From Macrostomum lignano (taxonomy: Eukaryota): DNA of 64,000 bases. The notes under the pieces were generated by a model, which was given only the letters and a program-made list of their open reading frames with translations, made no database searches and was not told where the DNA came from. Shown here in pieces: positions 9,091-47,354 of the stretch. A program made the translations under genes and the position numbers. Location of the stretch: positions 1-64,000 of the forward strand of contig NIVC01002152.1 of the NCBI GenBank assembly GCA_002269645.1, written 5' to 3'. Positions within the stretch are counted from its first letter, which is position 1. Every line of letters starts with the position of its first letter.

Positions 9091-9596
9091 TTCACGTGAT
9101 AAGCCGCAGCTCTGTGACAACTACATGTGTACATGTATTAGATTAATTTGGGTCGCATAGATGGTCAACTCCGCACCAACTTCCAAACAGTAATAAACTT
9201 TGCAGTTGATATTCCTGCCAGCTCTGGGATTGCATGGCTGGCATGACAGGTTGATAACTGTGTAGTGTTTACAGGACTTCAAAATGTTGACATGTTTCGG
9301 CTTAAACTCGATTGATAAGGGGTCTGTTGGCTGATTGATATTTTTGCTGACTGAGATGATTTATTAGCTCGTACTGGTAGTTGGAACTACAGAGCTTCAT
9401 ATCGTATCAGATTTCGAATGATTGTTGAAGTCCTACGGTCCTGAGCGAGTGTAATAAATTTCCGGGTATACGAGCATATATTGAGAGAATTGCTACCAAA
9501 GCCCCATGGCGACCACCCGGAAATAATAAACGGCCTGGAGGGCTCGAGAACCCGGAGTCCCTGGTTCGATTTTGTGCGCGACCACATTCATATGGG

Positions 9597-11163
9597 CAGG
9601 GGCGTCGCCATGGATTTTACCGTAGGGGGGGGGGGACAAAGTCAAGAATTCTACATAACATGAATAAATTATTATATGTACAATATATTTCGTGACCGGT
9701 GTCATCACTCATTTTGTCGCTGCAGACACTCATTTTAGCGCTGCAGACACTCATTTTGTCGCTGCAGACACTCATTTTGGCGCTGCAGACACTCATTTTG
9801 GCGCTGCAGACACTCATTTTGTCGCTGCAGACACTCATTTTGGCGCTGCAGACACTCATTTTGTCGCTGCAGACACTCATTTTGTCGCTGCAGACACTCA
9901 TTTTGTCGCTGCAGACACTCATTTTGTCGCTGCAGACACTCATTTTGTCGCTGCAGACACTCATTTTGGCGCTGCAGACACTCATTTTGTCGCTGCAGAC
10001 ACTCATTTTGTCGCTGCAGACACTCATTTTGTCGCTGCAGACACTCATTTTAGCGCTGCAGACACTCATTTTGTCGCTGCAGACACTCATTTTAGCGCTG
10101 CAGACACTCATTTTGGCGCTGCAGACACTCATTTTAGCGCTGCAGACACTCATTTTGGCGCTGCAGACACTCATTTTGTCGCTGCAGACACTCATTTTGT
10201 CGCTGCAGACACTCATTTTGTCGCTGCAGACACTCATTTTGTCGCTGCAGACACTCATTTTGGCGCTGCAGACACTCATTTTGTCGCTGCAGACACTCAT
10301 TTTGTCGCTGCAGACACTCATTTTGTCGCTGCAGACACTCATTTTGTCGCTGCAGACACTCATTTTGTCGCTGCAGACACTCATTTTGTCGCTGCAGACA
10401 CTCATTTTGTCGCTGCAGACACTCATTTTGTCGCTGCAGACACTCATTTTGGCGCTGCAGACACTCATTTTGTCGCTGCAGACACTCATTTTGTCGCTGC
10501 AGACACTCATTTTGTCGCTGCAGACACTCATTTTGTCGCTGCAGACACTCATTTTGTCGCTGCAGACACTCATTTTGGCGCTGCAGACACTCATTTTGTC
10601 GCTGCAGACACTCATTTTGTCGCTGCAGACACTCATTTTGTCGCTGCAGACACTCATTTTGTCGCTGCAGACACTCATTTTGTCGCTGCAGACACTCATT
10701 TTGTCGCTGCAGACACTCATTTTGTCGCTGCAGACACTCATTTTGTCGCTGCAGACACTCATTTTGGCGCTGCAGACACTCATTTTGTCGCTGCAGACAC
10801 TCATTTTGTCGCTGCAGACACTCATTTTGGCGCTGCAGACACTCATTTTAGCGCTGCAGACACTCATTTTGTCGCTGCAGACACTCATTTTGGCGCTGCA
10901 GACACTCATTTTGGCGCTGCAGACACTCATTTTGTCGCTGCAGACACAATTTTGGCGCTGCAGACACAATTTTGGCGCTGCAGACACTCATTTTAGCGCT
11001 GCAGACACAATTTTGGCGCCTAAGGCATTTTGACATCCTGAAGCAAAATTTCTGATTTTCACAACGGGTCAGTCACAAGGTGGGGTGGGTCAAGCATGGC
11101 GTCCCCCATAGCTTTTACTGGGGGGGGGCATTCCCCCCTGTCCCCCCGGTGGCGACGCCCCTG
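9597..11163. mobile_element. hAT-type MITE carrying a 21-bp tandem array (x~63)
   Basis: 14-bp TIRs CAGGGGCGTCGCCA/TGGCGACGCCCCTG; 8-bp flanks catatggg/tatatggg (7/8); internal gcagacactcattttgtcgct array ~9703-11030; second family member at 60019-60771. Confidence 0.85.
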
Positions 11164-12388
11164 TATATGGGGCTTGGGAGCACGATAATTGGCCGGGTGG
11201 CTGTCGTGCGATTCACTGCAGCCATGAGGGCCAACCCCAAGGCGCAGAGAGTGTTCATGCCAGACGATTGGGAAAGTCAGTGCCGTTGTTGCACACCCTG
11301 TTTGAGCATAACATGAGCGCTTGCAGGTCCATCAAAGGACCACTGGTAGTAAAAGGATGTTGAAAAATTCAGAAAAAATGGATTTGAAGGCCCCGTTTCA
11401 TTTTTATAAAAACGATTTATTCATGTAAATTTAGCAATTTCAAAGAAAAGAGCAAACTATTGAAGTCGGGAAGCGATGTCAGTTGGCTCGTGATGTCGAG
11501 AGCGAGAAGAGAAGACGAAATTAGTAGCTGTATATCAAATGTATATGAGAGACCTCATGTAGGTGCATAAAAAACAAAGTTGAAAATAAGTGTGCAGGGC
11601 GAATCCAAGTAACAATGATCGCCAGTCAGCAAATAACGTATCCGTGTGTGTTGCTCAGAACGGAGGGCCACTTCCAGTCTCTCCATCTCCGTCTCTCTCT
11701 CCTGTCTCCTATTCCTCTCTCCCTCTATCGAACCCTTTCTTTCACTCTGCTTCTGAAGCCTGCAGTTCTGCCCGAATTCAGTTGTCCTTTACAAAAGTTG
11801 TTTACAGCGCAGAAAATTCCAGAATGTATTGCTACTCGGATCTCTATAAACATTGTAGTTTCAGTCTCTACCCTACCGTCTGCGATCCAGCTACTCACCA
11901 GTGTGTATGCATTATTTTTCTTTTCATTCTGTCTAGCTGTATCTGCTGGAAGAAAAAACGTGACTCGAGCCTCACGTGTGCGCTCGGGACCACTTGCTGA
12001 GTGGGAGGGGGGGGCTCTTATTGTCCAGATGCGATGCAGCAGGGGTTTACAGAGGCAATAAGATTTAGACAGCATTCTAGCACAATAGAATAGAGACTGG
12101 CCTATTGCATAGCCTGGCGGCTCTTATCGCTGCTGCACGTTTCTGATGGACCCCGTGCGAGACTCACCCGATTCGAGGGACCCGTGCCGATCCCCCCGCA
12201 GTGGCTGCATGGTTGCCGTGGTCTCACCCTACCTATCATTGTTTTCAGTGCTGCATAAATAAAGGCTAGCCATAGCTCTAAGCAGCGAGTCGACTTGACC
12301 TTCTCTCAGTCTGTTTTCGGTTCAAGCAAATAACTATAATTTTTGACAAAGAGAAGATTTTCACTGCTCCCTGCTTTATTGCAACGTC

Positions 12389-12409
12389 ATGAGGCTGGGC
12401 GGCATCGCT
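12389..12409 (+). CDS. Orphan secreted VWA-like/cationic-aromatic repeat protein, exon 1 (MRLGGIA)
   Basis: ATG at 12389 followed by GCT|gtgagt donor; phase 0 joins exon 2 and completes a signal peptide. Confidence 0.7.
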
Positions 12410-12768
12410 GTGAGTCAAAGGGGATCTCATGGGATCTGCCCCATACTTCATGCTCCCTTCATTTCCCATCAACCCGAACCACATGGCTACTTCTCTTTGA
12501 GTTCGAGAACAGAGGACGACACAGAGACACTTCTAGATGCGGTCTCTAGCTTTGAAATTGTAGCCAATTTGTACCCTAACACCTGCAGCCTGAGTCCAAT
12601 ACCTAACAGAAACGCCTGCTGACTGAATTCAGTATCATTTAGAGTGGCTTAGTCGGTGGCATTATCTGGGAGGAGATTGCTTAATTAACCTATATCATTT
12701 ATTATTGCATTGGGTATATAGTGGCGCGAGCCTTAGAAAAATTCAAAATTCAGATACATGGGACTGTC

Positions 12769-12925
12769 AACCTCAGAGATATGGGGGCGCCAGCCTCAGG
12801 GATATGGGGGCGCCAGCCTCAGAGATATGGGGAGCGCCAACCTCAGAGATATGGGGAGCGCCAACCTCAGAGATATGGGAGCGCCAACCTCAGAGATATG
12901 GGGAGCGCCAACCTCAGAGATATTG
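12769..12925. repeat. 22-23-bp minisatellite (cctcagagatatggggagcgccaa) in intron 1
   Basis: About 7 tandem copies. Confidence 0.9.
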
Positions 12926-12991
12926 GGAGCCAGCTAGGAATCGAACTCAAGGACTCAAAGCTCAAAGCTGTTGTCTCGGCCACTCCCTCAG

Positions 12992-13197
12992 CCGCTGTAT
13001 GCGACGGCAGTCCTCCTCCTGATAGTGGCGTTGGCGCCCACCGCGACGGCCAAGCGCGAGACGAAGACCTACACAGTCAACACCGGTGACGGGCCGGTCA
13101 CGGTGACAGAGACTCACGTGTCCGAGACCTCTTCGTCCTCGTCTTCACCGTCCGAATACAGCAGCAGCTCGGAGGTGGTTGAGACCAGCGGCTGGAG
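12992..13197 (+). CDS. Orphan secreted protein exon 2 (signal peptide h-region plus acidic Ser/Thr-rich segment)
   Basis: tccctcag|ccg acceptor; PLYATAVLLLIVALAPTATA-KRETKT...SSSSSSPSEYSSSSEVVETSGW; ag|gtaaga donor. Confidence 0.85.
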
Positions 13198-13384
13198 GTA
13201 AGATCGGCCTATTAATTCTAGAAGGACGTTTTAATGTCAAATGCGAATTTCGCAAATAAAGTGCAAATTTCGTTGGAAGCCGGTTGCTGTTTGTCTCTTT
13301 AGTCTGGTTTTTCTCTACCGAATATGTCTATGGTCAAACCCCATTCGGCGCCTTTAAAATGCAACGGTATTTTCAGCGTTACTA

Positions 13385-13615
13385 TTTTTATTGCCTTAAT
13401 GGGCAGATGCCCGGCGCATCTCTGGAGGCTGCGTACGGCTGTTCAGTCCAAGGGTCGCCACACAGCCTCAATTACCCCAGCTAATGCTGGCACCCATTTT
13501 ACAGCTGGGTGAACTGAAGCAATGCAGAGTTAAATGTCTTGCTTGAGGACACAAATTGTTCTCAGTGGGTTGAGAATCGAACTCCTGACCTTTCAGTCGT
13601 GACAGTAATTTTAAT
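13385..13615 (-). mobile_element. tRNA-derived SINE with conserved central domain, in intron 2
   Basis: Minus strand has the B-box-like ggagttcgattc, then gtgtcctcaagcaagacatttaac and cacccagctgtaaaatgggtgcc, motifs typical of metazoan core-domain SINEs (recognised by eye). Confidence 0.55.
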
Positions 13616-13884
13616 TTTCCCTTAATAATTTTCCCTAATAGTTTTTTCTCAAATTTTTCTCGGATACAAAATAGTGCATCAAACTAATACGACAGAAATG
13701 CTTGCTCCAGTTTTAATTCGATAGTCCAGAAGGAGAAACATTGGGAGTTCAGTGCTAAAAAGCTGAAACTCCCCATCTTGCCAATGCATATTTTGTAGCG
13801 AACTCTGCCCTATTTGACATTGTAGCGTCCTTCGACTTGAGTTTTCTGTCTTTAAAAAACCCATCGATCATTGCCCCCCCCCAG

Positions 13885-14107
13885 CTCGAGCGCCAAGGAG
13901 CTGCTGAAGGATTCGAAGGTCAGCGACATGTCCGCTGGGGACCTAAGCGGCAGTCTGGTGCTGGCAATCGATAAAAACGCCATCTCCAAAGGTCTGAAAA
14001 AGTACATCATGGACGCTTTGAAGAAGCTACCGGTGAAGACCAAGAAGATTAAAATTGGCTTCGTGGAGTACACGGATCGTCCTTATACGATTGTGTCGCT
14101 GAAGCAG
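13885..14107 (+). CDS. Orphan secreted protein exon 3 (N-half of degenerate VWA-like domain)
   Basis: ccccag|c acceptor, phase 2; LVLAID...KIKIGFVEYTDRPYTIVSL resembles VWA strands A and B; cag|gtgagg donor. Confidence 0.8.
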
Positions 14108-14127
14108 GTGAGGACGGCTGAGATCCC

Positions 14128-14385
14128 GGCACCTGACCCTGACACCCACCCTGAACCTGGCACCTGACCCTGACAACCATTCTGAACCCGGTACCTGACC
14201 CTGACACCCACCCTGAACCTGGCACCTGACCCTGACACCCACCCTGAACCTGGCACCTGACCCTGACACCCACCCTGAACCTGGCACCTGACCCTGACAC
14301 CCACCCTGAACCTGGCACCTGACCCTGACACCCTACTCCAAACCCGGTACCTGACCCTGACATCCTACTCCGAACCCGGTACTGG
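14128..14385. repeat. 31/32-bp C-rich minisatellite (cctgaccctgacacccaccctgaacctggca) in intron 3
   Basis: About 8 copies; reverse complement of the array at 14827-15219. Confidence 0.92.
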
Positions 14386-14555
14386 ACCCAAAAACTTACA
14401 TGAACTCTAACACACAGAAACCAATTAATCAGCATCAAATTCATGAATAGTGAGGTTTATAGACAGTCTTATAAGCTGTCCGGCAGCCCGATGTACTGCA
14501 TGCAGCTTGTACACCGCTGGCTAAGTGAAGCTCACTGATTCAAATCGCTCTCCAG

Positions 14556-14821
14556 GGCTGGTCGCTTGACCGGATCTTGGCCAGGCTCCAAATCGAGCTA
14601 TCCAAGAGTCGCCACGCCAAGCGGAGCGGCAAAGTTTACGATTACGTCGGCATCCAGGCGGCCTACAACGAGTTGCAAAAGTTCGGCAAGTCCTCCGGAC
14701 CGAGGATTGTCATGCTGCTGAGCTCCGGGCGGGACGCCAACACGGCCAAGACAGAGAAGTGGCGGCACAAACTCATGAAAGAGTGGATCAGCCTTTCCGA
14801 GATTGTTGTGGACTCGTCTTC
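14556..14821 (+). CDS. Orphan secreted protein exon 4 (C-half of VWA-like domain)
   Basis: ctctccag|ggc acceptor, phase 0; GIQAAYNELQKFG...PRIVMLLSSGRD resembles VWA ALxxA...PKVVVLLTDG; tc|gtgagt donor. Confidence 0.8.
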
Positions 14822-14826
14822 GTGAG

Positions 14827-15219
14827 TACCGGGTTCGGGGTAGGGTGTCAGGGTCAGGTACCGGGTTCGGGGTAGGGTGGCAGGGTCAGGCACCGGGTTC
14901 GGGGTAGGGTGGCAGGGTCAGGTACCGGGTTCGGGGTAGGGTGGCAGGGTCAGGTACCGGGTTCGGGGTAGGGTGGCAGGGTCAGGTACCGGGTTTGGAG
15001 TAGGGTGTCAGGGTCAGGTACCGGGTTCAGAATGGGTGTCGGTCAGGTACCGGGTTCGGGGTAGGGTGGCAGGGTCAGCTACCGGGTTCGGGGTAGGGTG
15101 GCAGGGTCAGCTACCGGGTTCGGGGTAGGGTGGCAGGGTCAGCTACCGGGTTCGGGGTAGGGTGGCAGGGTCAGCTACCGGGTTCGGGGTAGGGTGGCAG
15201 GGTCAGCTACCGGGTTCGG
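14827..15219. repeat. 32-bp G-rich minisatellite (taccgggttcggggtagggtggcagggtcagg) in intron 4
   Basis: About 12 copies, starting within the donor hexamer. Confidence 0.92.
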
Positions 15220-15620
15220 ATTTTCGCTGTGTTCGAGCAAACATGAAATGAAACGTTTCCCTGAATTTTGTTTCTACAAACGGTAATTTTTAAACTGGTA
15301 GTGATCGATGACGTCAGGTTATTCAACTATTCCTTCAGACAGAATGTAGATTTTTTCTGCACTAAAATTTCTGAGTATTTCCTATTTACCAAAATCGATT
15401 TTTTCTTGGCTTATCGGAAATCAAAGGGATGATGTAAAATTTTATTAAAAATTCCGAATTTAAAATTCCAATTCCAACCTTATGCGCATGAGGGGGGCTG
15501 TGGGCACCGCAGTCAAGGTCAATTCTAAAGGGTGCCTGCTATCACGCTAAGCACACGCTCTCAAAGGCTGCACACAAGGACTGCTTAAGCACAATTCCAA
15601 TTCCCCTATCCGAGATCCAG

Positions 15621-15748
15621 ATTACTGTGGCCGCACATTGAAACCTTTTTTAGGGGCATCTTCAACGTGAAAGAAGGCGGCAAGGAGACATCCACGGACA
15701 AAACCTTGGAGCACACGACATTCCTGACTACCCTGCTTAAGTCGTACA
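15621..15748 (+). CDS. Orphan secreted protein exon 5 (LLWPHIETFFRGIFNVKE...LLKSY)
   Basis: gatccag|a acceptor (phase 2) and a|gtaagg donor (phase 1) reconcile the phases of exon 4 and exon 6 with no stop. Confidence 0.75.
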
Positions 15749-15831
15749 GTAAGGATATAAGCATTTATTTGCTGTTCAATAATGCCTAGATGTGCTGTCA
15801 GCAAATAAAAATCCAATATTGATCTCTTTAG

Positions 15832-18800
15832 GCCACTCAACTATCCAGTACTACAAGAAGATCTATGGCGAAGCGTGGGAGTTCTACATAGTCCTCAAGC
15901 ACTACAAGACTCTTTACCCCGGCAGCTGGCAGACGCATTTGAAGACCTGGTTTACCAATAAATATGGCGACTCTACCAAGTTCGAGACCTACTTGCACCG
16001 GACCGAGAGCAAGACTGGCTCCCCGGTTTCTCCGGAAGACAGAATGCGAGCTACTTTCAAGAAGAAGTACGGCTCAGCTTGGGAGAAGCACTTCCTAATT
16101 TGGAAGTACAAGAAGCTCTACGGTTTGAAGTGGAAAATCCACTACGAGCAGCATTTGATGAAGAAGAAGTACGGCAAGGACTGGTTCTCGGAATGGGAGA
16201 AGTTGCGATTTAAGAAGAAATACGGGAAGAAGTGGGAGCCCCACTATGTGAAGTGGTATTTCAGGAAATACCGAGGGGCCACCTGGATTTACAGCTGGAA
16301 GAAGTGGCAGTTTAGACAAAAGCACAAAGAGGGCAGCAAGGCGTACGTTGACGAGTTCATGAGATGGTACTTCAAGTACACTAAAAAGGGTGACAAAGCG
16401 CTTGAGGCGTGGAAATCCGCTACCAAAGACCTGTCTGAGGACGAAGGCGAGAAGAAGTTCCGCTGGTTTTACTACAATTTAGTATTCCAGAAAAAGCAGG
16501 CACTGATCAAATACACCAAGTGGTTCTACAGGAAGCGGTTCGGCAAAAAGTTCCTACCAAAGTACAAGTTGTGGCTGAACAGGTTCAATACAAACAAGCA
16601 CTGGATGAAATATTACAAACTGATGGAAACGCAACTAGCCTACACTACTACCAGTTCTGTGACTGTTCATGTACACAGCATTCGCTGGTTTAAAAAGAAG
16701 TTCGGTTCCAAGTGGAGAACGCACTACGAGAAATATCAAATGAAGAAAAAATACGGCAAAAACTGGTTCTCCGAGTGGGAGAAGTTGCCATTCAAGAAAA
16801 AGTACGGCAAGAAATGGGAGCCGCACTATGTAAAGTGGTATTTTAAAAAATACCGACCTACGACTTGGATTTACAGCTGGATGAAATGGAAGATCAAGCA
16901 AAAGCATAAGGAAGGAAGCCAGGCCTATGTTAATGAGTTTATGCGATGGTACTTCCGGTACAAAAAGGCAGGAGGCAGTGCTTTTTCAGAGTGGAAAGCT
17001 TTAAACAAGGATCTGTCGGCTGACAAGAAGGAAATGATGTTCCGCTGGTTTTACTATAACCTAGTCTTCAAAAAAAAGAAAGCTCTGATAAAGTACACGA
17101 AATGGCACTACAGAAAAATATACGGAAAAACGTTTCTAACGAAGTTCAAGGAATGGGGAAAAAAAATCAACTCTGGTAAAGCCTGGATTCGGTTATACCA
17201 AAAAACTAACCATCAACTCCAATACCAGGTCGAGTGCGGGAGGGGAAAACCACATGTTAAAACTGCAACCTGGTACAAGAGACACTACGGTCGCAAGTGG
17301 CGCTGGTACTACACCCGAGTGGTCTACCGTCGACGCTACGGTCGCAAGTGGCGCGTGCACTTTAGGAAGTGGCTGAAGAGAGTGTGGAAGAAGCCGTCAC
17401 CGAAGCGTCGCGTCCTGCGCAAGGTCACCTGGTACAAGAGACACTACGGTCGCAAGTGGCGCTGGTACTACACCCGAGTGGTCTACCGTCGACGCTACGG
17501 TCGCAAGTGGCGCGTGCACTTTAGGAAGTGGCTGAAGAGAGTGTGGAAGAAGCCGTCACCGAAGCGTCGCGTCCTGCACAAGGTCACCTGGTACAAGAGA
17601 CACTACGGTCGCAAGTGGCGCTGGTACTACACCCGAGTGGTCTACCGTCGACGCTACGGTCGCAAGTGGCGCGTGCACTTTAGGAAGTGGCTGAAGAGAG
17701 TGTGGAAGAAGCCGTCACCGAAGCGTCGCGTCCTGCACAAGGTCACCTGGTACAAGAGACACTACGGTCGCAAGTGGCGCTGGTACTACACCCGAGTGGT
17801 CTACCGTCGACGCTACGGTCGCAAGTGGCGCGTGCACTTTAGGAAGTGGCTGAAGAGAGTGTGGAAGAAGCCGTCACCGAAGCGTCGCGTCCTGCACAAG
17901 GTCACCTGGTACAAGAGACACTACGGTCGCAAGTGGCGCTGGTACTACACCCGAGTGGTCTACCGTCGACGCTACGGTCGCAAGTGGCGCGTGCACTTTA
18001 GGAAGTGGCTGAAGAGAGTGTGGAAGAAGCCGTCACCGAAGCGTCGCGTCCTGCACAAGGTCACCTGGTACAAGAGACACTACGGTCGCAAGTGGCGCTG
18101 GTACTACACCCGAGTGGTCTACCGTCGACGCTACGGTCGCAAGTGGCGCGTGCACTTTAGGAAGTGGCTGAAGAGAGTGTGGAAGAAGCCGTCACCGAAG
18201 CGTCGCGTCCTGCACAAGGTCACCTGGTACAAGAGACACTACGGTCGCAAGTGGCGCTGGTACTACACCCGAGTGGTCTACCGTCGACGCTACGGTCGCA
18301 AGTGGCGCGTGCACTTTAGGAAGTGGCTGAAGAGAGTGTGGAAGAAGCCGTCACCGAAGCGTCGCGTCCTGCACAAGGTCACCTGGTACAAGAGACACTA
18401 CGGTCGCAAGTGGCGCTGGTACTACACCCGAGTGGTCTACCGTCGACGCTACGGTCGCAAGTGGCGCGTGCACTTTAGGAAGTGGCTGAAGAGAGTGTGG
18501 AAGAAGCCGTCACCGAAGCGTCGCGTCCTGCACAAGGTCACCTGGTACAAGAGACACTACGGTCGCAAGTGGCGCTGGTACTACACCCGAGTGGTCTACC
18601 GTCGACGCTACGGTCGCAAGTGGCGCGTGCACTTTAGGAAGTGGCTGAAGAGAGTGTGGAAGAAGCCGTCACCGAAGCGTCGCGTCCTGCACAAGGTCAC
18701 CTGGTACAAGAGACACTACGGTCGCAAGTGGCGCTGGTACTACACCCGAGTGGTCTACCGTCGACGCTACGGTCGCAAGTGGCGCGTGCACTTTAGGAAG

Positions 18801-21800
18801 TGGCTGAAGAGAGTGTGGAAGAAGCCGTCACCGAAGCGTCGCGTCCTGCACAAGGTCACCTGGTACAAGAGACACTACGGTCGCAAGTGGCGCTGGTACT
18901 ACACCCGAGTGGTCTACCGTCGACGCTACGGTCGCAAGTGGCGCGTGCACTTTAGGAAGTGGCTGAAGAGAGTGTGGAAGAAGCCGTCACCGAAGCGTCG
19001 CGTCCTGCACAAGGTCACCTGGTACAAGAGACACTACGGTCGCAAGTGGCGCTGGTACTACACCCGAGTGGTCTACCGTCGACGCTACGGTCGCAAGTGG
19101 CGCGTGCACTTTAGGAAGTGGCTGAAGAGAGTGTGGAAGAAGCCGTCACCGAAGCGTCGCGTCCTGCACAAGGTCACCTGGTACAAGAGACACTACGGTC
19201 GCAAGTGGCGCTGGTACTACACCCGAGTGGTCTACCGTCGACGCTACGGTCGCAAGTGGCGCGTGCACTTTAGGAAGTGGCTGAAGAGAGTGTGGAAGAA
19301 GCCGTCACCGAAGCGTCGCGTCCTGCACAAGGTCACCTGGTACAAGAGACACTACGGTCGCAAGTGGCGCTGGTACTACACCCGAGTGGTCTACCGTCGA
19401 CGCTACGGTCGCAAGTGGCGCGTGCACTTTAGGAAGTGGCTGAAGAGAGTGTGGAAGAAGCCGTCACCGAAGCGTCGCGTCCTGCACAAGGTCACCTGGT
19501 ACAAGAGACACTACGGTCGCAAGTGGCGCTGGTACTACACCCGAGTGGTCTACCGTCGACGCTACGGTCGCAAGTGGCGCGTGCACTTTAGGAAGTGGCT
19601 GAAGAGAGTGTGGAAGAAGCCGTCACCGAAGCGTCGCGTCCTGCACAAGGTCACCTGGTACAAGAGACACTACGGTCGCAAGTGGCGCTGGTACTACACC
19701 CGAGTGGTCTACCGTCGACGCTACGGTCGCAAGTGGCGCGTGCACTTTAGGAAGTGGCTGAAGAGAGTGTGGAAGAAGCCGTCACCGAAGCGTCGCGTCC
19801 TGCACAAGGTCACCTGGTACAAGAGACACTACGGTCGCAAGTGGCGCTGGTACTACACCCGAGTGGTCTACCGTCGACGCTACGGTCGCAAGTGGCGCGT
19901 GCACTTTAGGAAGTGGCTGAAGAGAGTGTGGAAGAAGCCGTCACCGAAGCGTCGCGTCCTGCACAAGGTCACCTGGTACAAGAGACACTACGGTCGCAAG
20001 TGGCGCTGGTACTACACCCGAGTGGTCTACCGTCGACGCTACGGTCGCAAGTGGCGCGTGCACTTTAGGAAGTGGCTGAAGAGAGTGTGGAAGAAGCCGT
20101 CACCGAAGCGTCGCGTCCTGCACAAGGTCACCTGGTACAAGAGACACTACGGTCGCAAGTGGCGCTGGTACTACACCCGAGTGGTCTACCGTCGACGCTA
20201 CGGTCGCAAGTGGCGCGTGCACTTTAGGAAGTGGCTGAAGAGAGTGTGGAAGAAGCCGTCACCGAAGCGTCGCGTCCTGCACAAGGTCACCTGGTACAAG
20301 AGACACTACGGTCGCAAGTGGCGCTGGTACTACACCCGAGTGGTCTACCGTCGACGCTACGGTCGCAAGTGGCGCGTGCACTTTAGGAAGTGGCTGAAGA
20401 GAGTGTGGAAGAAGCCGTCACCGAAGCGTCGCGTCCTGCACAAGGTCACCTGGTACAAGAGACACTACGGTCGCAAGTGGCGCTGGTACTACACCCGAGT
20501 GGTCTACCGTCGACGCTACGGTCGCAAGTGGCGCGTGCACTTTAGGAAGTGGCTGAAGAGAGTGTGGAAGAAGCCGTCACCGAAGCGTCGCGTCCTGCAC
20601 AAGGTCACCTGGTACAAGAGACACTACGGTCGCAAGTGGCGCTGGTACTACACCCGAGTGGTCTACCGTCGACGCTACGGTCGCAAGTGGCGCGTGCACT
20701 TTAGGAAGTGGCTGAAGAGAGTGTGGAAGAAGCCGTCACCGAAGCGTCGCGTCCTGCACAAGGTCACCTGGTACAAGAGACACTACGGTCGCAAGTGGCG
20801 CTGGTACTACACCCGAGTGGTCTACCGTCGACGCTACGGTCGCAAGTGGCGCGTGCACTTTAGGAAGTGGCTGAAGAGAGTGTGGAAGAAGCCGTCACCG
20901 AAGCGTCGCGTCCTGCACAAGGTCACCTGGTACAAGAGACACTACGGTCGCAAGTGGCGCTGGTACTACACCCGAGTGGTCTACCGTCGACGCTACGGTC
21001 GCAAGTGGCGCGTGCACTTTAGGAAGTGGCTGAAGAGAGTGTGGAAGAAGCCGTCACCGAAGCGTCGCGTCCTGCACAAGGTCACCTGGTACAAGAGACA
21101 CTACGGTCGCAAGTGGCGCTGGTACTACACCCGAGTGGTCTACCGTCGACGCTACGGTCGCAAGTGGCGCGTGCACTTTAGGAAGTGGCTGAAGAGAGTG
21201 TGGAAGAAGCCGTCACCGAAGCGTCGCGTCCTGCACAAGGTCACCTGGTACAAGAGACACTACGGTCGCAAGTGGCGCTGGTACTACACCCGAGTGGTCT
21301 ACCGTCGACGCTACGGTCGCAAGTGGCGCGTGCACTTTAGGAAGTGGCTGAAGAGAGTGTGGAAGAAGCCGTCACCGAAGCGTCGCGTCCTGCACAAGGT
21401 CACCTGGTACAAGAGACACTACGGTCGCAAGTGGCGCTGGTACTACACCCGAGTGGTCTACCGTCGACGCTACGGTCGCAAGTGGCGCGTGCACTTTAGG
21501 AAGTGGCTGAAGAGAGTGTGGAAGAAGCCGTCACCGAAGCGTCGCGTCCTGCACAAGGTCACCTGGTACAAGAGACACTACGGTCGCAAGTGGCGCTGGT
21601 ACTACACCCGAGTGGTCTACCGTCGACGCTACGGTCGCAAGTGGCGCGTGCACTTTAGGAAGTGGCTGAAGAGAGTGTGGAAGAAGCCGTCACCGAAGCG
21701 TCGCGTCCTGCACAAGGTCACCTGGTACAAGAGACACTACGGTCGCAAGTGGCGCTGGTACTACACCCGAGTGGTCTACCGTCGACGCTACGGTCGCAAG

Positions 21801-24422
21801 TGGCGCGTGCACTTTAGGAAGTGGCTGAAGAGAGTGTGGAAGAAGCCGTCACCGAAGCGTCGCGTCCTGCACAAGGTCACCTGGTACAAGAGACACTACG
21901 GTCGCAAGTGGCGCTGGTACTACACCCGAGTGGTCTACCGTCGACGCTACGGTCGCAAGTGGCGCGTGCACTTTAGGAAGTGGCTGAAGAGAGTGTGGAA
22001 GAAGCCGTCACCGAAGCGTCGCGTCCTGCACAAGGTCACCTGGTACAAGAGACACTACGGTCGCAAGTGGCGCTGGTACTACACCCGAGTGGTCTACCGT
22101 CGACGCTACGGTCGCAAGTGGCGCGTGCACTTTAGGAAGTGGCTGAAGAGAGTGTGGAAGAAGCCGTCACCGAAGCGTCGCGTCCTGCACAAGGTCACCT
22201 GGTACAAGAGACACTACGGTCGCAAGTGGCGCTGGTACTACACCCGAGTGGTCTACCGTCGACGCTACGGTCGCAAGTGGCGCGTGCACTTTAGGAAGTG
22301 GCTGAAGAGAGTGTGGAAGAAGCCGTCACCGAAGCGTCGCGTCCTGCACAAGGTCACCTGGTACAAGAGACACTACGGTCGCAAGTGGCGCTGGTACTAC
22401 ACCCGAGTGGTCTACCGTCGACGCTACGGTCGCAAGTGGCGCGTGCACTTTAGGAAGTGGCTGAAGAGAGTGTGGAAGAAGCCGTCACCGAAGCGTCGCG
22501 TCCTGCACAAGGTCACCTGGTACAAGAGACACTACGGTCGCAAGTGGCGCTGGTACTACACCCGAGTGGTCTACCGTCGACGCTACGGTCGCAAGTGGCG
22601 CGTGCACTTTAGGAAGTGGCTGAAGAGAGTGTGGAAGAAGCCGTCACCGAAGCGTCGCGTCCTGCACAAGGTCACCTGGTACAAGAGACACTACGGTCGC
22701 AAGTGGCGCTGGTACTACACCCGAGTGGTCTACCGTCGACGCTACGGTCGCAAGTGGCGCGTGCACTTTAGGAAGTGGCTGAAGAGAGTGTGGAAGAAGC
22801 CGTCACCGAAGCGTCGCGTCCTGCACAAGGTCACCTGGTACAAGAGACACTACGGTCGCAAGTGGCGCTGGTACTACACCCGAGTGGTCTACCGTCGACG
22901 CTACGGTCGCAAGTGGCGCGTGCACTTTAGGAAGTGGCTGAAGAGAGTGTGGAAGAAGCCGTCACCGAAGCGTCGCGTCCTGCACAAGGTCACCTGGTAC
23001 AAGAGACACTACGGTCGCAAGTGGCGCTGGTACTACACCCGAGTGGTCTACCGTCGACGCTACGGTCGCAAGTGGCGCGTGCACTTTAGGAAGTGGCTGA
23101 AGAGAGTGTGGAAGAAGCCGTCACCGAAGCGTCGCGTCCTGCACAAGGTCACCTGGTACAAGAGACACTACGGTCGCAAGTGGCGCTGGTACTACACCCG
23201 AGTGGTCTACCGTCGACGCTACGGTCGCAAGTGGCGCGTGCACTTTAGGAAGTGGCTGAAGAGAGTGTGGAAGAAGCCGTCACCGAAGCGTCGCGTCCTG
23301 CACAAGGTCACCTGGTACAAGAGACACTACGGTCGCAAGTGGCGCTGGTACTACACCCGAGTGGTCTACCGTCGACGCTACGGTCGCAAGTGGCGCGTGC
23401 ACTTTAGGAAGTGGCTGAAGAGAGTGTGGAAGAAGCCGTCACCGAAGCGTCGCGTCCTGCACAAGGTCACCTGGTACAAGAGACACTACGGTCGCAAGTG
23501 GCGCTGGTACTACACCCGAGTGGTCTACCGTCGACGCTACGGTCGCAAGTGGCGCGTGCACTTTAGGAAGTGGCTGAAGAGAGTGTGGAAGAAGCCGTCA
23601 CCGAAGCGTCGCGTCCTGCACAAGGTTGGTTGGTTCAAGCGACGTTATGGAACAAACTGGCGTTGGTACTACACTCGAGTTGTTTATCAGCATCGATTTG
23701 GTCGGAAGTGGAGGGTGCATTTTAAACTATGGGAAAAGCACACGTGGAAGCGTCCGGCTCCAAAACGTCCGCACGTTATAGTGCACACTTTGAGATGGTT
23801 TAAAAAGCATTATCCTAAGAATTGGAGGTGGTATTACACTCGGCTGGTTTATCATCGAAAATTTGGAATTAAATGGAGATCTCACTTTCGAAGGTGGGTG
23901 AAAACGGTCTGGAAGAAGCCGTCGCCGAAGCGTCGCGTCCTGCACAAGGTCACCTGGTACAAGAGACACTACGGTCGCAAGTGGCGCTGGTACTACACCC
24001 GAGTGGTCTACCGTCGACGCTACGGTCGCAAGTGGCGCGTGCACTTTAGGAAATGGCTGAAACGCGTTTGGAAGAAGCCGAGCCCAAAGAATGTGCGCAA
24101 GGTCACGTGGTTCAATCGCCGATCTGGGCGGCATGCTTGGCGTTTGCACGTAAAGCGCACGAAGCATCGTTTAAGGAAGTACAGCATCGCATGGTTTAAG
24201 CACCGATACGGGTCCAACTGGAAGTGGTTCTACGTCAAGCGAAAATATCGTCGGCGCTATGGTTCTAGTTGGCGCGTACACTTCAAGAAGTGGCGAAAGA
24301 CCGTCTGGAAGAGGCCGGCGCCGAAGAGTGTGCGCAAGGTGACGTGGTTCAATCGCCGAGCTGGGCGGCATGCTTGGCGTTTGCGCGTAAAGCGCACCAA
24401 GCATCGTGTGAAGAAGCACTAA
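15832..24422 (+). CDS. Orphan secreted protein exon 6: ~2860-aa K/R/W/Y-rich repeat region
   Basis: ctctttag|gc acceptor; 8.6-kb open frame; non-repetitive DNA at both ends encodes the same motif with different codons; TAA at 24420-24422. Joined CDS 21+206+223+266+128+8591 = 9435 nt = 3144 aa. Confidence 0.9.
17271..23630 (+). repeat. Coding tandem repeat, 159 bp (53 aa) x40
   Basis: 6360 bp / 159 = 40; only the first copy visibly differs (cgc vs cac). Confidence 0.97.
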
Positions 24423-25110
24423 TTAGATGCGGCCTGAAAGTGATTTTATTTCAGCTGGTTCGCTTGTGATTGCATATCTGACGACAGTGTGTTGAGTAAA
24501 GTGCAACTTTATAAGTGTCACAGAATGATTTTCAACAATTCAACAGCTACGATTTCTTATCTTGCTGGGCCAAGGCTGGCTTCATTTTTTACATTTTACG
24601 CAGGTTAGGTGTCTATTACGAAGATGTTCCCGATCTGAAAGTATTTTTATCTGGTTCAAGCGGCAGACTGAAATCTAGTAGCAGACAATGTTTTCTAAAG
24701 CATAGCTTGTGATACTAACTACTTCTAATGATACTACACATCTGCGAGTCTGTTCTATTTACTGTGTATGAACTTCAATTTGTTAACACTCGTCATAAAT
24801 ATTTATTGAATTCTTCAGCTGCTAACAACGTAACAAATTTTATTGGACTGAAAATTTCTCGAACAAACACCATAACAGCTTTTTCTAAGAATCTCTAAAA
24901 ATACATAGCGTAACACTTTAAACAGCATTCAATAGCTGCTTTATTTGATTAATTCAACATTTGGTAGCTTAGCAAAACTATTAATTTTCGAAATGTATCA
25001 GACTAAAATACTTCACTCAGGAAGACTACGTAAAAATGGACAATAAGAAGGAAAAGACAATAAGGCTTAAATGCATTAAGCCACGAGTGCTCTGAAAGAC
25101 TAAGACACTC

Positions 25111-25430
25111 AGATACTAAAATATTAAGACACCCAAACATTAAGACACTGAGACACTCAGACACTAAAACAGACAACAAGACACTCAGACACTAAGACAC
25201 CAAGACACTCAGACACTCAAACATTAAGACACTGAGACACTGAGACACTTATAGACACCAAGACATCAAGACACAGAAAGACACTAAAACACTAAAACAC
25301 TTATACACAATAAAACACTCAGACACTCAGACATTAAAACACTGAGTCACTCAGACATTAAGACACACCAAGACACTCAGACACTAAGACACTTGGACAT
25401 TAAGAAACTAAGACACTCAGACACTGAGAC
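25111..25430. repeat. Degenerate agacact(c/a/g)a simple repeat
   Basis: Recurrent 8-9-bp units. Confidence 0.75.
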
Positions 25431-26014
25431 AAACCAGAATCGTGACACAAAGGCAGACAGACAAGGCAGAATGCAATGGGAGCCGTTCCCATTGGCCTAC
25501 AGCTGAAGGCACGGGAGTCTGGGAAAGCCGAATCCAATGAGGCTGCTAGGAGCCAGATGTAGGGATGGGGCGCAGCTTCTGAGCAGGTCTGTGAGATGTT
25601 TGTGAAAAGCAGACGCCGCATTGCCGAGGACCCGATAGCTACAGGGAATCGCGAGCAGCCCCAGAGATTCGGCTAATAAAGTCAATTCGAGCGCAGACTT
25701 CTTACCTGAACAGCTGCCAGGATTCTGCACTGTAAGATCAGCTACTTATCTTGCCGCGTGAGCTATCAGTTTGCTCAATTTTCCTGTGTTTTGGCAATCG
25801 TTTTTGGGAACAGCTGGCAAAATTTCCCGCGTGGTTGAGTATTCAAAAATATGCCTTTCGTTCTGTACTATTGCTTTCGTAGGTATTTGATTGTTAGGGT
25901 GGCTGAGAATTGGCGAGTGAATAGATTGTGTGGTAGACAGTGAATAGACACAAACATCAGTGAGTAAACAGACTATACTATACAGATATATAGTAAACAG
26001 ATTATAGTGAATAG

Positions 26015-27049
<1,035 letters not shown>

Positions 27050-27674
27050 CTGGCAGAGTTTAAAAATATTTGAGATAGGAGTAGAATGACGCAAGTTCTG
27101 TCCAAGTGAGAAAATAATGAATTACTGACACTGCAATGCGCTGCACTTACAGAGAACTCCGATAATAAAAACGCTTTTAAAATAGTAGATGTCGTCGAAC
27201 CCAAGGAGCAATAAAACTGCATGCAGAATTAATTTGATTGTCTTCTGTTTGGGTGGCCAGAGTATGTTCTTCCCTATTCAAGCCGCAGTGCAGTCGACTG
27301 GGCCGCCTCTACTTCCCTAGGGCGGACAACTAAGCAGCCTCGCTGGTCCGCCATAAAAGAATCCCCAGATTAAAGAGTGATGAGGCTGCGGCCGGAGACT
27401 GAGAGAGGGCGATAAAAATGGAAAAAAAAGTTCACGCGTTTGGCCCGTGCTCAGGGGCTGGGAATTCTGGTATGAGGAGCTCCTTTTTCGCCTTTTTTTG
27501 AATTAAATCTGGGATCAGATCCAGAGGAGACAATGGAAAAATGGGGAAATCGTTATTAACCTTTGTTAAAGAGATCAGGAATTTCTATGGGAGCTTCACT
27601 CTCAATGCACAGTTTTAGTCGCTAGAGTATTCTATATACATTGAGTGCCCTCAATGCCACTAACTGGCGCCCCA

Positions 27675-30803: not shown

Positions 30804-31143
30804 CTATTGAGTATTCAGTATTGTTGGTTTTAGCAAAAGCCATCGAATTCTGCAATTCTGAAATCTGCACATTTAAACAGCGGGCGGAGCAGCATGCTTA
30901 AAAATTAAAAACGCGCTATGACAGAGCAGTGGTCAATTCACTCAATAGTTGCTGGATTCACACTCGGCCGCCTGAGACTAGCTCTGGCTGGCGCGGTTTC
31001 CCCGCCTGTCTCTGGGGAGTTGCGACAATGCAGTGTCCGAGTGGGGCTCCCGTCCAAACTAGATTAAATTGAGGCTGGCCTGGCTGACGCCAGCTGCGGC
31101 CTCTGCCGTGAGTGCTGACAGAAATTGAAGTAGGAATTAGGGG

Positions 31144-31398
<255 letters not shown>

Positions 31399-31405
31399 CC
31401 GCAGG

Positions 31406-47314: not shown

Positions 47315-47354
47315 CTGGGAGCGGGATGGAATGAGTAGGCTTAACAATGGACAA

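What the first reader, a model, noticed from the sequence alone, without database searches (positions are those of the whole stretch)
12389..24422. Giant orphan secreted protein: signal peptide + acidic segment + VWA-like domain + ~2860 aa cationic-aromatic polymer (candidate glue, eggshell or rhabdite material)
Seen: six exons join through consensus GT-AG sites with all phases consistent into a 3144-aa ORF starting MRLGGIAPLYATAVLLLIVALAPTATA (signal peptide). The ORF track shows only the last exon. The 53-aa unit has 13 R, 9 K, 6 W, 6 Y, 3 H, 1 F and no D, E or C, giving +22 per unit and about +880 over the array. Known: Lys/Arg plus Tyr/DOPA/Trp cation-pi chemistry underlies mussel foot and sandcastle-worm cements, and flatworm eggshell precursors are Tyr/Lys/His-rich. 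The Macrostomum adhesive Mlig-ap1 is K/R-rich but has a lectin/vWD/EGF architecture, not this one. Inference: an undescribed class of secreted self-coacervating biomaterial or defence protein. I recognise no family for the repeat region.
Basis: partly seen in the sequence, partly recalled or inferred. Interest (0 to 1): 0.92.

Follow-up and report, generated by a model that had tools for sequence, protein, structure and literature searches.

The report
Giant cationic secreted repeat protein, Macrostomum
The window holds a real, transcript-supported gene of the flatworm Macrostomum lignano for a secreted protein of about 3,100 residues whose tail is an extremely positively charged, tryptophan- and tyrosine-rich repeat found in no other organism; public databases list it only as a truncated hypothetical protein, and its function, most likely a granule-packed glue or matrix material, is untested.

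Summary
Window 12389-24422 (+) is a six-exon gene with GT-AG introns. The parts are a signal peptide, a Ser/Thr-rich acidic linker, a diverged collagen-VI-type VWA domain without MIDAS, and 2863 aa of cationic-aromatic repeats.

The window is Macrostomum lignano contig NIVC01002152.1. The gene is already annotated from transcripts as BOX15_Mlig004350g1 (PAA60436.1), with the same start, stop and five junctions. That model has only 958 aa because 6525 nt of the array are dropped. No GT/GC-AG junction fits that gap, so it is a collapsed-repeat artefact.

The repeat is built from a 17-aa module, YGxxWxxHYxxWxxKKK. Old diverged copies show saturated synonymous change with conserved protein sequence. 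38 of the 40 array units are DNA-identical, which points to recent amplification.

Searches of 1.84 billion representative proteins, Pfam and the PDB found no relative of the repeat outside M. lignano. I found no published characterisation or expression data.

The closest known kind is the giant polycationic cohesive proteins of flatworm adhesives (Mlig-ap1 flanks, Tmed-ap3). Composition and head domain differ, and there is no sequence similarity. Function remains inferred: a polyanion-condensing, cation-pi cohesive material.

The parts
12389..12409 (+). Exon 1: ATG and first 7 residues (MRLGGIA) of the signal peptide; donor GTGAGT
   Evidence: identical in P0001/P0006
12992..13051 (+). Start of exon 2: rest of the signal peptide (aa 8-27, PLYATAVLLLIVALAPTATA); predicted cleavage after TATA
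   Evidence: only Kyte-Doolittle window above 1.6 in the whole protein; sequence read
13052..13197 (+). Rest of exon 2: predicted beta-hairpin (KRETKTYTVNTGDGPVTVTETHV) and Ser-rich acidic stretch (SETSSSSSSPSEYSSSSEVVETS)
   Evidence: AF2 gives pLDDT about 85 for the hairpin; composition
13885..14107 (+). Exon 3: end of the linker and N-terminal third of the VWA domain (beta1 LVLAIDKNAIS, alpha1, beta2 IKIGFVEY, beta3)
   Evidence: Pfam VWA E=2.9e-4; PDB collagen VI alpha3 E=9.4e-7 and VWF A1 E=0.04; alignment
14556..14821 (+). Exon 4: middle of the VWA domain (beta4 PRIVMLLSSG, beta5 EIVVDSS)
15654..15748 (+). Exon 5: C-terminal end of the VWA domain
15832..17267 (+). Exon 6, first part: 479 aa of diverged 17-aa modules (YGxxWxxHYxxWxxKKK), including two super-repeats of about 200 aa, A (aa 345-552) and B (aa 553-749)
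   Evidence: module list; A vs B 62% aa identity, pS 0.87 (saturated), dN 0.275
17268..23627 (+). Exon 6: array of 40 tandem 159-bp / 53-aa units (TWYKRHYGRKWRWYYTRVVYRRRYGRKWRVHFRKWLKRVWKKPSPKRRVLHKV); 38 units are identical in DNA
23628..24422 (+). Exon 6 tail: two diverged units, one canonical unit (23952), two further diverged and truncated units, stop TAA at 24420-24422
   Evidence: pS 0.61-0.87, pN 0.19-0.34 against the canonical unit
14128..14362 (.). Intron 3 minisatellite (31 bp x 7.5). It is the reverse complement of the intron 4 minisatellite, so the two arrays form inverted repeats flanking exon 4
   Evidence: arms up to 94 nt, 90% complementary
14826..15219 (.). Intron 4 minisatellite (32 bp x 12.4), the inverted partner of the intron 3 array
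12768..12930 (.). Intron 1 minisatellite (24 bp x 6.9)

Best explanation
This is a real, expressed, lineage-restricted gene of Macrostomum lignano. It encodes a secreted protein of about 412 kDa with two functional parts. Shown from sequence: a cleavable signal peptide; a short beta-hairpin plus a Ser/Thr-rich acidic linker; a collagen-VI-type VWA domain that has lost its metal-binding MIDAS residues; and a 2863-aa tail of about 160 modules of roughly 17 residues (YGxxWxxHYxxWxxKKK). The tail is 38% Arg+Lys and 24% Trp+Tyr+Phe, has almost no acidic residues and carries a net charge of about +1060. An old set of diverged modules is conserved at the protein level. One 53-aa unit (three modules) has recently been amplified to 40 near-identical copies by the same tandem-duplication process that fills this genome with minisatellites. 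Inferred mechanism: the protein is a gland-cell secretory-granule material, a polycationic cohesive or matrix component. The tail condenses with polyanions such as sulfated or carboxylated glycans and phosphoproteins for dense packing in granules. After release into sea water it holds together and binds anionic surfaces through Arg/Lys-Trp/Tyr cation-pi and pi-pi contacts, which survive high salt. The abundant Tyr may add oxidative cross-linking by a secreted tyrosinase or peroxidase. The MIDAS-less VWA head supplies a specific protein-protein anchor to a partner matrix protein, to a cell surface or to itself. I put the gene and its giant product at about 0.8-0.85. I put the cohesive/matrix mechanism at about 0.4, and the confidence figure below refers to that mechanism.
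For: Gene reality. The junctions, start and stop are identical to the transcript-derived NCBI models. The Mlig_3_7 annotation is built only from RNA-seq and transcript evidence (PMC5730564). Exons are 99.2-100% identical to the homeologous loci, against 90.5-96.5% for introns. The 749 pre-array codons compared with L002 show 8 synonymous and 6 non-synonymous differences, pN/pS 0.19. Diverged repeats have saturated synonymous sites with dN 0.2-0.4. Array retained in the mRNA. None of the 37 possible junction positions for the 6525-nt gap in the annotation has GT/GC...AG. The array is in frame with both coding flanks. Homeologous loci carry 40+3 units and at least 41 units, and their frame breaks are almost all 1-bp deletions in a CCC homopolymer, which is a typical PacBio error. 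Secretion. The single N-terminal hydrophobic segment has a signal-peptide layout and there is no other hydrophobic segment. Head domain. VWA hits are closest to collagen VI. Material-like tail. There is no family match. There is one Cys and no N-glycosylation sequon. Precedent in the same animal group. Mlig-ap1 KR regions and Tmed-ap3/Mile-ap3 are giant secreted polycations that act as the cohesive component. They are inhibited by heparin, and a secreted tyrosinase has been proposed as their cross-linker (PMC6410801; PMC9229212).
Against: There is no expression, localisation or protein-level evidence. The gene ids do not occur in the full text of the paper library. They also do not occur in the held supplements of the four papers whose supplements could be searched; a fifth paper had none held as text. 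They are absent from the complete compilation of ISH-tested transcripts (PMC7336406 file 16). Those screens concentrated on tail, prostate, antrum and gonad, so this absence weakly argues against an adhesive-organ or prostate product. The tail has very little Gly/Ser, unlike the known GRK/GRKHS cohesives. AlphaFold without an alignment predicts helices but at low confidence (pLDDT 53), so it is open whether the tail is a folded solenoid or disordered. The perfect identity of 38 units could be partly a polishing artefact, because Pilon was run on multi-mapping reads. The true copy number in the mRNA is unverified.
Confidence: 0.42

Rival explanations
1. Polyprotein precursor of defence peptides. 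The 40 identical 53-aa units would be cut apart at the basic site in the PSPKRR|V linker by a proprotein convertase. This would release many copies of an Arg/Trp-rich cationic peptide that kills microbes, deters predators or attacks prey membranes.
For: The units are identical and head to tail, as in multi-copy peptide precursors. Arg/Trp-rich composition is typical of membrane-active antimicrobial peptides (general knowledge). A KRR site sits at each unit border. A signal peptide is present.
Against: There are no acidic spacers or propieces to neutralise +22 per unit. Dibasic sites occur every few residues, so convertase cleavage would not be unit-specific. The older diverged modules (aa 271-749) lack the PSPKRR linker and look like one continuous domain. 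The hydrophobic moment at 100 degrees is not above that of shuffled sequence, z about 1.3. A VWA head is not a feature of known peptide precursors.
Confidence: 0.13
2. Precursor of a covalently tanned structure such as eggshell, cement or a stylet-like hard part. The Tyr/Lys/His-rich tail would be a substrate for phenol-oxidase quinone tanning, so the product works as an insoluble cross-linked wall rather than a reversible non-covalent coacervate.
For: The tail has 10.7% Tyr, 17.5% Lys and 5.4% His. Secreted tyrosinases occur in flatworm gland systems (PMC9229212).
Against: Known eggshell precursors are small and Gly/Tyr-rich. They do not have 21% Arg and 10.5% Trp. No similarity to any flatworm eggshell protein appeared in the searches. 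The gene ids are absent from the ISH compilation, which includes ovary and developing-egg genes.
Confidence: 0.15
3. The working protein is the product of about 950-1000 aa: head, diverged modules and tail. The 40-unit array would be a very recent, essentially neutral in-frame minisatellite expansion. Alternatively it could be inflated or homogenised by assembly, or variably removed from the mRNA. On this reading 'giant' is incidental.
For: 38 units are DNA-identical. 15% of this genome is simple or tandem repeat (PMC5730564), and the window alone has 61 TRF rows. The deposited model has 958 aa. Polishing used multi-mapping reads.
Against: No canonical splice junction can produce the 958-aa product. 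Short-read assemblers collapse perfect repeats, which explains that model. Three independent contigs and the ML2 assembly all carry 40 or more units. The arrays keep their frame apart from homopolymer errors, and their commonest variant, A112C, which most units carry, is synonymous.
Confidence: 0.15
4. Intracellular nucleic-acid or chromatin condenser, for example a sperm nuclear basic protein, with the N-terminus not acting as a secretory signal.
For: Extreme Arg/Lys content and pI about 12.
Against: The N-terminal segment has a classical signal-peptide layout. An extracellular-type VWA domain closest to collagen VI is present. Aromatic content of 24% is unlike protamines or histones.
Confidence: 0.03

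Closest known systems
Flatworm cohesive adhesive polycations: Mlig-ap1 KR/GRK flanking regions (M. lignano), Mile-ap3 (Minona ileanae), Tmed-ap3 (Theama mediterranea; 3700 aa)
   Same: All have a signal peptide followed by thousands of residues of repetitive, extremely basic sequence. All are flatworm gland products that are hard to assemble from short reads and hard to see by tryptic MS. Charge-based binding to polyanions is the proposed working principle (PMC6410801, PMC9229212).
   Different: Their repeats are Gly/Arg/Lys(/His/Ser) low complexity. Here Gly is 4% and Trp+Tyr 21%, arranged in a defined 17-aa module. Mlig-ap1 has a C-lectin/vWD/C8/TIL/EGF core, whereas this protein has a single VWA (type A) head. 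No sequence similarity was detected to any other M. lignano protein. Expression in the adhesive gland has not been shown.
Collagen VI / von Willebrand factor type A (VWA) domains
   Same: The head domain aligns over the whole VWA fold. The best hits are collagen VI alpha3 (PDB 9han, E=9.4e-7), a collagen alpha-4(VI)-like protein (E=5e-5) and VWF A1 (E=0.04). UniProt labels the protein 'VWFA domain-containing'.
   Different: The Pfam score of 21.6 bits is just under the gathering threshold of 23.8. The MIDAS motif DxSxS...T...D is degraded to DKNAI, and the TDG stretch to SSG. There is one domain, not an array, and it is fused to an unrelated repeat.
Mussel foot proteins and sandcastle-worm cement proteins (tandem-repeat, Lys/Tyr(DOPA)-rich polycations; cation-pi coacervation). 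Recalled from general knowledge, not tested here
   Same: They are secreted, basic, aromatic-rich and tandemly repeated. Cation-pi cohesion that tolerates sea-water salt is an established principle for them.
   Different: There is no sequence relationship. Their units are 5-10 residues with Pro/Hyp/Gly and no Trp, apart from the Perna viridis hydroxy-Trp case. Arg dominates here. DOPA is untested.
Multi-copy cationic peptide precursors (for example apidaecin-type polyproteins) and Arg/Trp-rich antimicrobial peptides. General knowledge
   Same: Many identical units sit in one ORF behind a signal peptide, with Arg/Trp chemistry.
   Different: There are no acidic spacers and no unit-specific processing sites. 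Units are 53 aa with +22 charge. The protein also has a large diverged non-unit region and a VWA head.

Membership tests
VWA domain (Pfam PF00092 / PROSITE VWFA) | Profile match at the curated threshold | tested here: not met
   Pfam gives 21.6 bits, E=2.9e-4, against a gathering score of 23.8, so the match falls just short. UniProt nevertheless names the protein 'VWFA domain-containing'.
VWA domain (Pfam PF00092 / PROSITE VWFA) | Sequence similarity to structurally solved VWA domains across the alternating beta-alpha core | tested here: met
   phmmer against the PDB: collagen VI alpha3 E=9.4e-7 (several domains matched) and VWF A1 E=0.04 over query 36-135. HMMER over 1.84 billion proteins hits a collagen alpha-4(VI)-like protein on aa 108-213. 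The alignment spans beta1 to beta6.
VWA domain (Pfam PF00092 / PROSITE VWFA) | Intact MIDAS metal site (DxSxS, T, D). This defines the metal-dependent subclass only | tested here: not met
   DxSxS is replaced by D-K-N-A-I, and the TDG stretch by SSG.
VWA domain (Pfam PF00092 / PROSITE VWFA) | Rossmann-like 3D fold | tested here: inconclusive
   AF2 without an alignment gives pLDDT below 50 over most of the domain. A fold search was therefore not run.
Flatworm cohesive adhesive proteins (ap1 KR/GRK regions, ap3) | Signal peptide plus a repetitive Lys/Arg-rich region of several thousand residues | tested here: met
   definitions from PMC6410801 and PMC9229212.
Flatworm cohesive adhesive proteins (ap1 KR/GRK regions, ap3) | Gly/Arg/Lys (His, Ser) low-complexity composition | tested here: not met
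   Gly 4.0%, Ser 2.5%, Trp 10.5%, Tyr 10.7%, Val 9.7%.
Flatworm cohesive adhesive proteins (ap1 KR/GRK regions, ap3) | Sequence homology to ap1/ap3, or the ap1 core domains (C-lectin, vWD, C8, TIL, EGF) | tested here: not met
   Pfam finds none of these domains. Searches return only copies of this same gene from M. lignano, whose annotated proteome is in the database.
Flatworm cohesive adhesive proteins (ap1 KR/GRK regions, ap3) | Expression in adhesive gland cells, and a non-adhesive RNAi phenotype | not testable with these tools
   No expression data were found. The ids are absent from the ISH compilation.
Multi-copy antimicrobial-peptide precursor | Identical peptide units separated by spacers and processing sites, with amphipathic or otherwise active units | tested here: inconclusive
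   Units are identical. There are no acidic spacers, and basic sites are everywhere. The hydrophobic moment is not significant, z=1.3 at 100 degrees.
DOPA-type marine adhesive proteins (mfp-like) | Tyr converted to DOPA in a short Lys/Tyr-rich tandem repeat | not testable with these tools
   Only the composition (10.7% Tyr, 17.5% Lys) can be read from the sequence. There is no sequence similarity to anything outside M. lignano.

The most novel reading that the evidence does not exclude
The 17-residue YGxxWxxHYxxWxxKKK module would define a new, Macrostomum-restricted family of secreted biomaterial proteins that use Arg/Lys-Trp/Tyr cation-pi chemistry rather than Gly/Lys/Arg or DOPA chemistry. 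It would give a salt-proof cohesive or granule-condensing polymer of about +1060 net charge, anchored through a MIDAS-less VWA head. It would be a second, chemically distinct polycation system in the flatworm where temporary adhesion is best understood, and among the most highly charged secreted proteins described. It could be the matrix of rhabdites, eggshell or cement, whose proteins are unknown in this animal.
Probability: 0.3. Interest if true: 0.8.

Novelty: new variant of a known kind. Interest (0 to 1): 0.6.

Why it matters
M. lignano is the reference model for reversible underwater adhesion, and it is genetically tractable (transgenesis, RNAi, ISH). A second giant polycation with Trp/Tyr/Arg chemistry would widen the known repertoire of natural wet-adhesive or matrix materials. 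It would also give a simple, fully repetitive 53-aa unit that can be made recombinantly for coacervation and adhesion studies.

On the practical side, this case shows that the deposited annotation under-reports the protein more than three-fold (958 against 3133 aa), because short-read transcript assemblies collapse perfect repeats. It also shows that tryptic proteomics would be blind to the protein, which has a Lys or Arg every 2-3 residues. Such proteins are therefore systematically missed in secretome studies.

If the array proves to be a neutral minisatellite expansion, the gene is still a clean example of how a repeat-prone genome inflates a coding exon.

Tried and rejected
1. I searched the literature for the gene, protein and UniProt ids (Mlig004350, Mlig034012, Mlig031229, PAA60436, A0A267EG50, A0A1I8HZJ0, A0A1I8FLB2). 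There were no hits in full text. There were also none in the supplements of PMC5816591, PMC7336406, PMC5946080 and PMC12896417. PMC10786194 has no held supplements (Mlig025189 was added). A caveat: the v3 transcript ids used in supplements may not always equal the NCBI locus tags.
2. I searched the window for the primers of the numerically neighbouring, ISH-tested gene Mlig004354. They are not present, so whether ids follow genomic order was left open.
3. AlphaFold2 on single sequences gave a head model at pLDDT 50 and a repeat model at pLDDT 53, pTM 0.23. These are too weak for a fold search, so none was run. Only the helical tendency of the modules and the N-terminal hairpin are mentioned.
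4. The amphipathic-helix idea (AMP-like) was not supported. The hydrophobic moment is not significantly above that of shuffles.
5. The repeat does not match known aromatic repeats (choline-binding, TPR-like). Pfam finds nothing at E<=1 and the best PDB hit has E=0.81.
6. C-mannosylation: only 2 WxxW sequons in 3133 aa and none in the unit. N-glycosylation: no sequons at all.
7. The annotated 958-aa isoform as a real splice product is rejected, because no GT/GC-AG junction is possible.
8. Pseudogene status of the homeologous copies is rejected. Their frame breaks are CCC-homopolymer deletions typical of PacBio data.
9. No second copy of the gene exists elsewhere in the window.
10. Absence of orthologues in other Macrostomum species could not be judged. 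Their genomes and transcriptomes do not appear to be represented in the protein collections searched.
Full report
**Where the window comes from.** A protein search with the spliced N-terminal 802 aa returned only Macrostomum lignano entries. The encoding-contig look-up for PAA60436.1 gave a locus identical to window 9389-27422, with the same coordinates in the source record. The window is therefore the first 64 kb of contig NIVC01002152.1 of assembly Mlig_3_7, GCA_002269645.1.

**Check of the gene model.** Reading 12200-16000 and testing all GT/AG combinations gives six exons:
- 12389-12409
- 12992-13197
- 13885-14107
- 14556-14821
- 15654-15748
- 15832-24422

The donors are GTGAGT, GTAAGA, GTGAGG, GTGAGT and GTAAGG. 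Every acceptor is AG preceded by a pyrimidine-rich stretch.

Two deposited models, P0001 (709 aa, partial) and P0006 (958 aa, complete), have exactly these five junctions, the same ATG and the same stop. P0006 equals my model over the first 799 and the last 171 residues. The Mlig_3_7 annotation was derived only from transcript evidence: StringTie/TACO on RNA-seq, plus the de novo assembly MLRNA150904 mapped with BLAT (PMC5730564). An mRNA that joins the signal-peptide exon to the last exon and runs to the same stop therefore exists.

**The 958-aa against 3133-aa discrepancy.** P0006 lacks 2175 aa, which is 6525 nt lying roughly between 17382 and 23940. Because of the repeats, the junction could sit at any of 37 positions. 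None of them has GT or GC at the 5' end together with AG at the 3' end. The gap is therefore what one expects when a short-read transcript assembly collapses perfect repeats and is then mapped back to the genome. It is not an intron.

The array is in frame with the coding sequence on both sides. Independent contigs of the homeologous or duplicated locus (L001, L002) carry 40+3 units and at least 41 units. An ML2-based UniProt model (A0A1I8IPI2, 4094 aa, misnamed 'Reverse transcriptase domain-containing') contains at least 51 units. The frame breaks in L001 and L002 are almost all single-base deletions in the CCC run at unit position 47, a typical PacBio error. Most units there carry A112C, a synonymous AGA-to-CGA change. 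I rate the giant product as likely (about 0.8) but not proven, because no long-read cDNA was available.

**Is the repeat coding, or just an open minisatellite?** An open frame over a tandem array is weak evidence. The 21-bp minisatellite at 9706-11019 in this same window yields ORFs of 434-456 aa on both strands, and the window has 61 TRF rows. The real evidence lies in the diverged copies.

The 479 aa before the array and the 264 aa after it are built from the same 17-residue module, YGxxWxxHYxxWxxKKK. The 53-aa unit is two such modules plus a third, degenerate one containing PSPKRR.
- Super-repeats A (aa 345-552) and B (aa 553-749) are 62% identical in protein, while their synonymous sites are saturated (pS 0.87, dN 0.275).
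- Diverged 53-aa units against the canonical unit give pS 0.61-0.87 and pN 0.19-0.34. Third codon positions are 45-53% identical, against 64-81% at first and second positions.
- Between the window and the homeologous loci, exons are 99.2-100% identical and introns 90.5-96.5%.
- The 749 pre-array codons differ from L002 at 8 synonymous and 6 non-synonymous sites, pN/pS 0.19.

The module family is therefore old and under protein-level constraint. The 40-unit array, with 38 units identical in DNA, is a recent amplification or a strongly homogenised block. Part of the perfect identity could come from Pilon polishing with multi-mapping reads.

**Anatomy of the protein.**
- *aa 1-27:* MRLGGIAPLYATAVLLLIVALAPTATA. 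This is the only hydrophobic segment of the protein, with a basic n-region, a 16-residue h-region and A-T-A before the cleavage site.
- *aa 28-95:* a predicted beta-hairpin (pLDDT about 85) followed by a Ser/Thr-rich, mildly acidic stretch (net -5, pI 4.6).
- *aa 96-270:* a VWA domain. Pfam gives E=2.9e-4, just under the gathering score. The PDB search gives collagen VI alpha3 at E=9.4e-7 and VWF A1 at E=0.04. The exhaustive HMMER search hit a collagen alpha-4(VI)-like protein on aa 108-213. The alignment covers the whole fold, but the MIDAS residues are lost: DxSxS becomes DKNAI and the TDG stretch becomes SSG.
- *aa 271-3133:* the repeat tail, with R 20.8%, K 17.5%, Y 10.7%, W 10.5%, V 9.7%, H 5.4%, D+E 1.3% and one Cys.

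The mature protein is about 412 kDa with net charge about +1069. There are no N-glycosylation sequons and only two WxxW motifs. AlphaFold on a single sequence predicts helices for the modules at low confidence (pLDDT 53-65). The first modules next to the VWA domain reach pLDDT 74-86. The hydrophobic moment is not significantly above that of shuffles. Whether the tail is a helical solenoid or disordered is open.

**Relatives.** HMMER over 1.84 billion representative proteins found only copies of this gene plus two weak VWA hits. Word-indexed searches with the N-terminal 802 aa and with the C-terminal 317 aa found only M. lignano copies. Pfam and the PDB have nothing for the repeat. The repeat is an orphan as far as these collections go. 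Other Macrostomum species do not seem to be represented in them, so the age of the family within the genus is unknown.

**Literature.** None of the identifiers occurs in the searchable full text or in the held supplements of the four M. lignano papers whose supplements could be searched; a fifth paper had none held as text. PMC7336406 contains a complete table (file 16) of ISH-tested transcripts mapped to Maclig_37v3 ids, and this gene is not among them. I therefore found no expression or functional data.

The nearest described things are the cohesive polycations of flatworm duo-gland adhesives. Mlig-ap1 has more than 3600 aa of Lys/Arg-rich flanks around a lectin/vWD/EGF core (PMC6410801). 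In other flatworms the Gly/Arg/Lys repeats form a separate protein, ap3; Tmed-ap3 has a signal peptide and 3700 aa, 88% of which are K, R, G, H and S. A secreted tyrosinase has been proposed as the cross-linker (PMC9229212).

**Interpretation.** The best-supported reading is a gland-secreted polycationic material. The tail would condense with polyanions in granules and, once released, cohere and bind through cation-pi and pi-pi contacts. The VWA head would act as a protein-protein anchor. All functional steps are inference from composition, architecture and precedent.

The rivals are:
- a polyprotein precursor of Arg/Trp-rich defence peptides;
- a covalently tanned eggshell or cement precursor;
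- a short working protein with a neutral, recent array expansion;
- an intracellular nucleic-acid binder, which the signal peptide and the VWA domain make unlikely.

The absence of the gene from the tail-, prostate- and gonad-focused ISH screens slightly disfavours those organs. Body-wide glands (rhabdite, mucus, pharyngeal) remain as open candidates as the adhesive organ.

**Verdict.** The protein is real, secreted by all sequence criteria, giant if the array is retained, and has no known family for its repeat. However, it is already deposited as an uncharacterised and mis-modelled protein, and it belongs to a known kind of flatworm secretory polycation. I class it as a new variant of a known kind, with moderate to high interest.

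Noticed in passing
window 14128-14362 and 14826-15219: The minisatellites in introns 3 and 4 are reverse complements of each other, so exon 4 (14556-14821, 266 nt) is flanked by inverted arrays with arms up to 94 nt at 90% complementarity. In the pre-mRNA they could pair and favour exon-4 skipping (which would shift the frame) or back-splicing.
   Followed up: partly
window 17382-23940; NCBI PAA60436.1, UniProt A0A267EG50, A0A1I8IPI2, A0A1I8FLB2: The public models of this gene are inconsistent. One has 958 aa with the array dropped at a non-canonical 'intron'. One has 4094 aa and is named 'Reverse transcriptase domain-containing'. One has 521 aa and is named 'CARD domain-containing'. The homeologous loci are split into partial genes: Mlig034012g1, and Mlig031229g1 plus Mlig025189g1.
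   Followed up: yes
L001 18875-25872 and L002 16403-23540 (NIVC01001672.1, NIVC01002000.1): The homeologous arrays carry a synonymous A112C variant in most but not all units, whereas all 40 units in the window have A. L002 has a different large-scale order (30 units, diverged pair, unit, diverged pair, at least 9 units) and is cut by the contig end. This suggests concerted evolution or unequal exchange, or mosaic polishing.
   Followed up: partly
window 15832-17267 compared with 17268-24080: Synonymous differences between old repeat copies exceed the random expectation (pS 0.77-0.87, above 0.75). GC content rises from 0.49 in the diverged part to 0.59 in the array. This suggests a shift in codon or base composition between old and amplified modules. 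It is unexplained.
   Followed up: no
window 1897-3981 (+): A GC-rich (64%) exon encodes an LLGL/WD40 beta-propeller protein of the lethal-giant-larvae or tomosyn type (Pfam LLGL E=7e-21). The same gene lies upstream of the homeologous copies.
   Followed up: partly
window 31112-32836 (+): An uninterrupted 574-aa ORF encodes a rhodopsin-type GPCR (7TM_GPCR_Srw E=5e-32, 7tm_1 E=7e-14), preceded by an ACT trinucleotide run at 31144-31394.
   Followed up: no
window 46625-47347 (-): An ORF has an RPN13/ADRM1 C-terminal UCH-binding domain (E=4e-28). A 4.3-kb minisatellite (20 bp x 214, 47354-51639) begins immediately beside it.
   Followed up: no
window 9699-11033 and the whole window: The window is packed with minisatellites (61 TRF rows). 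Several create long spurious ORFs on both strands, for example 434-456 aa over the 21-bp x 63 array at 9706-11019. This serves as an internal control showing that ORF length inside arrays is not evidence of a gene.
   Followed up: yes
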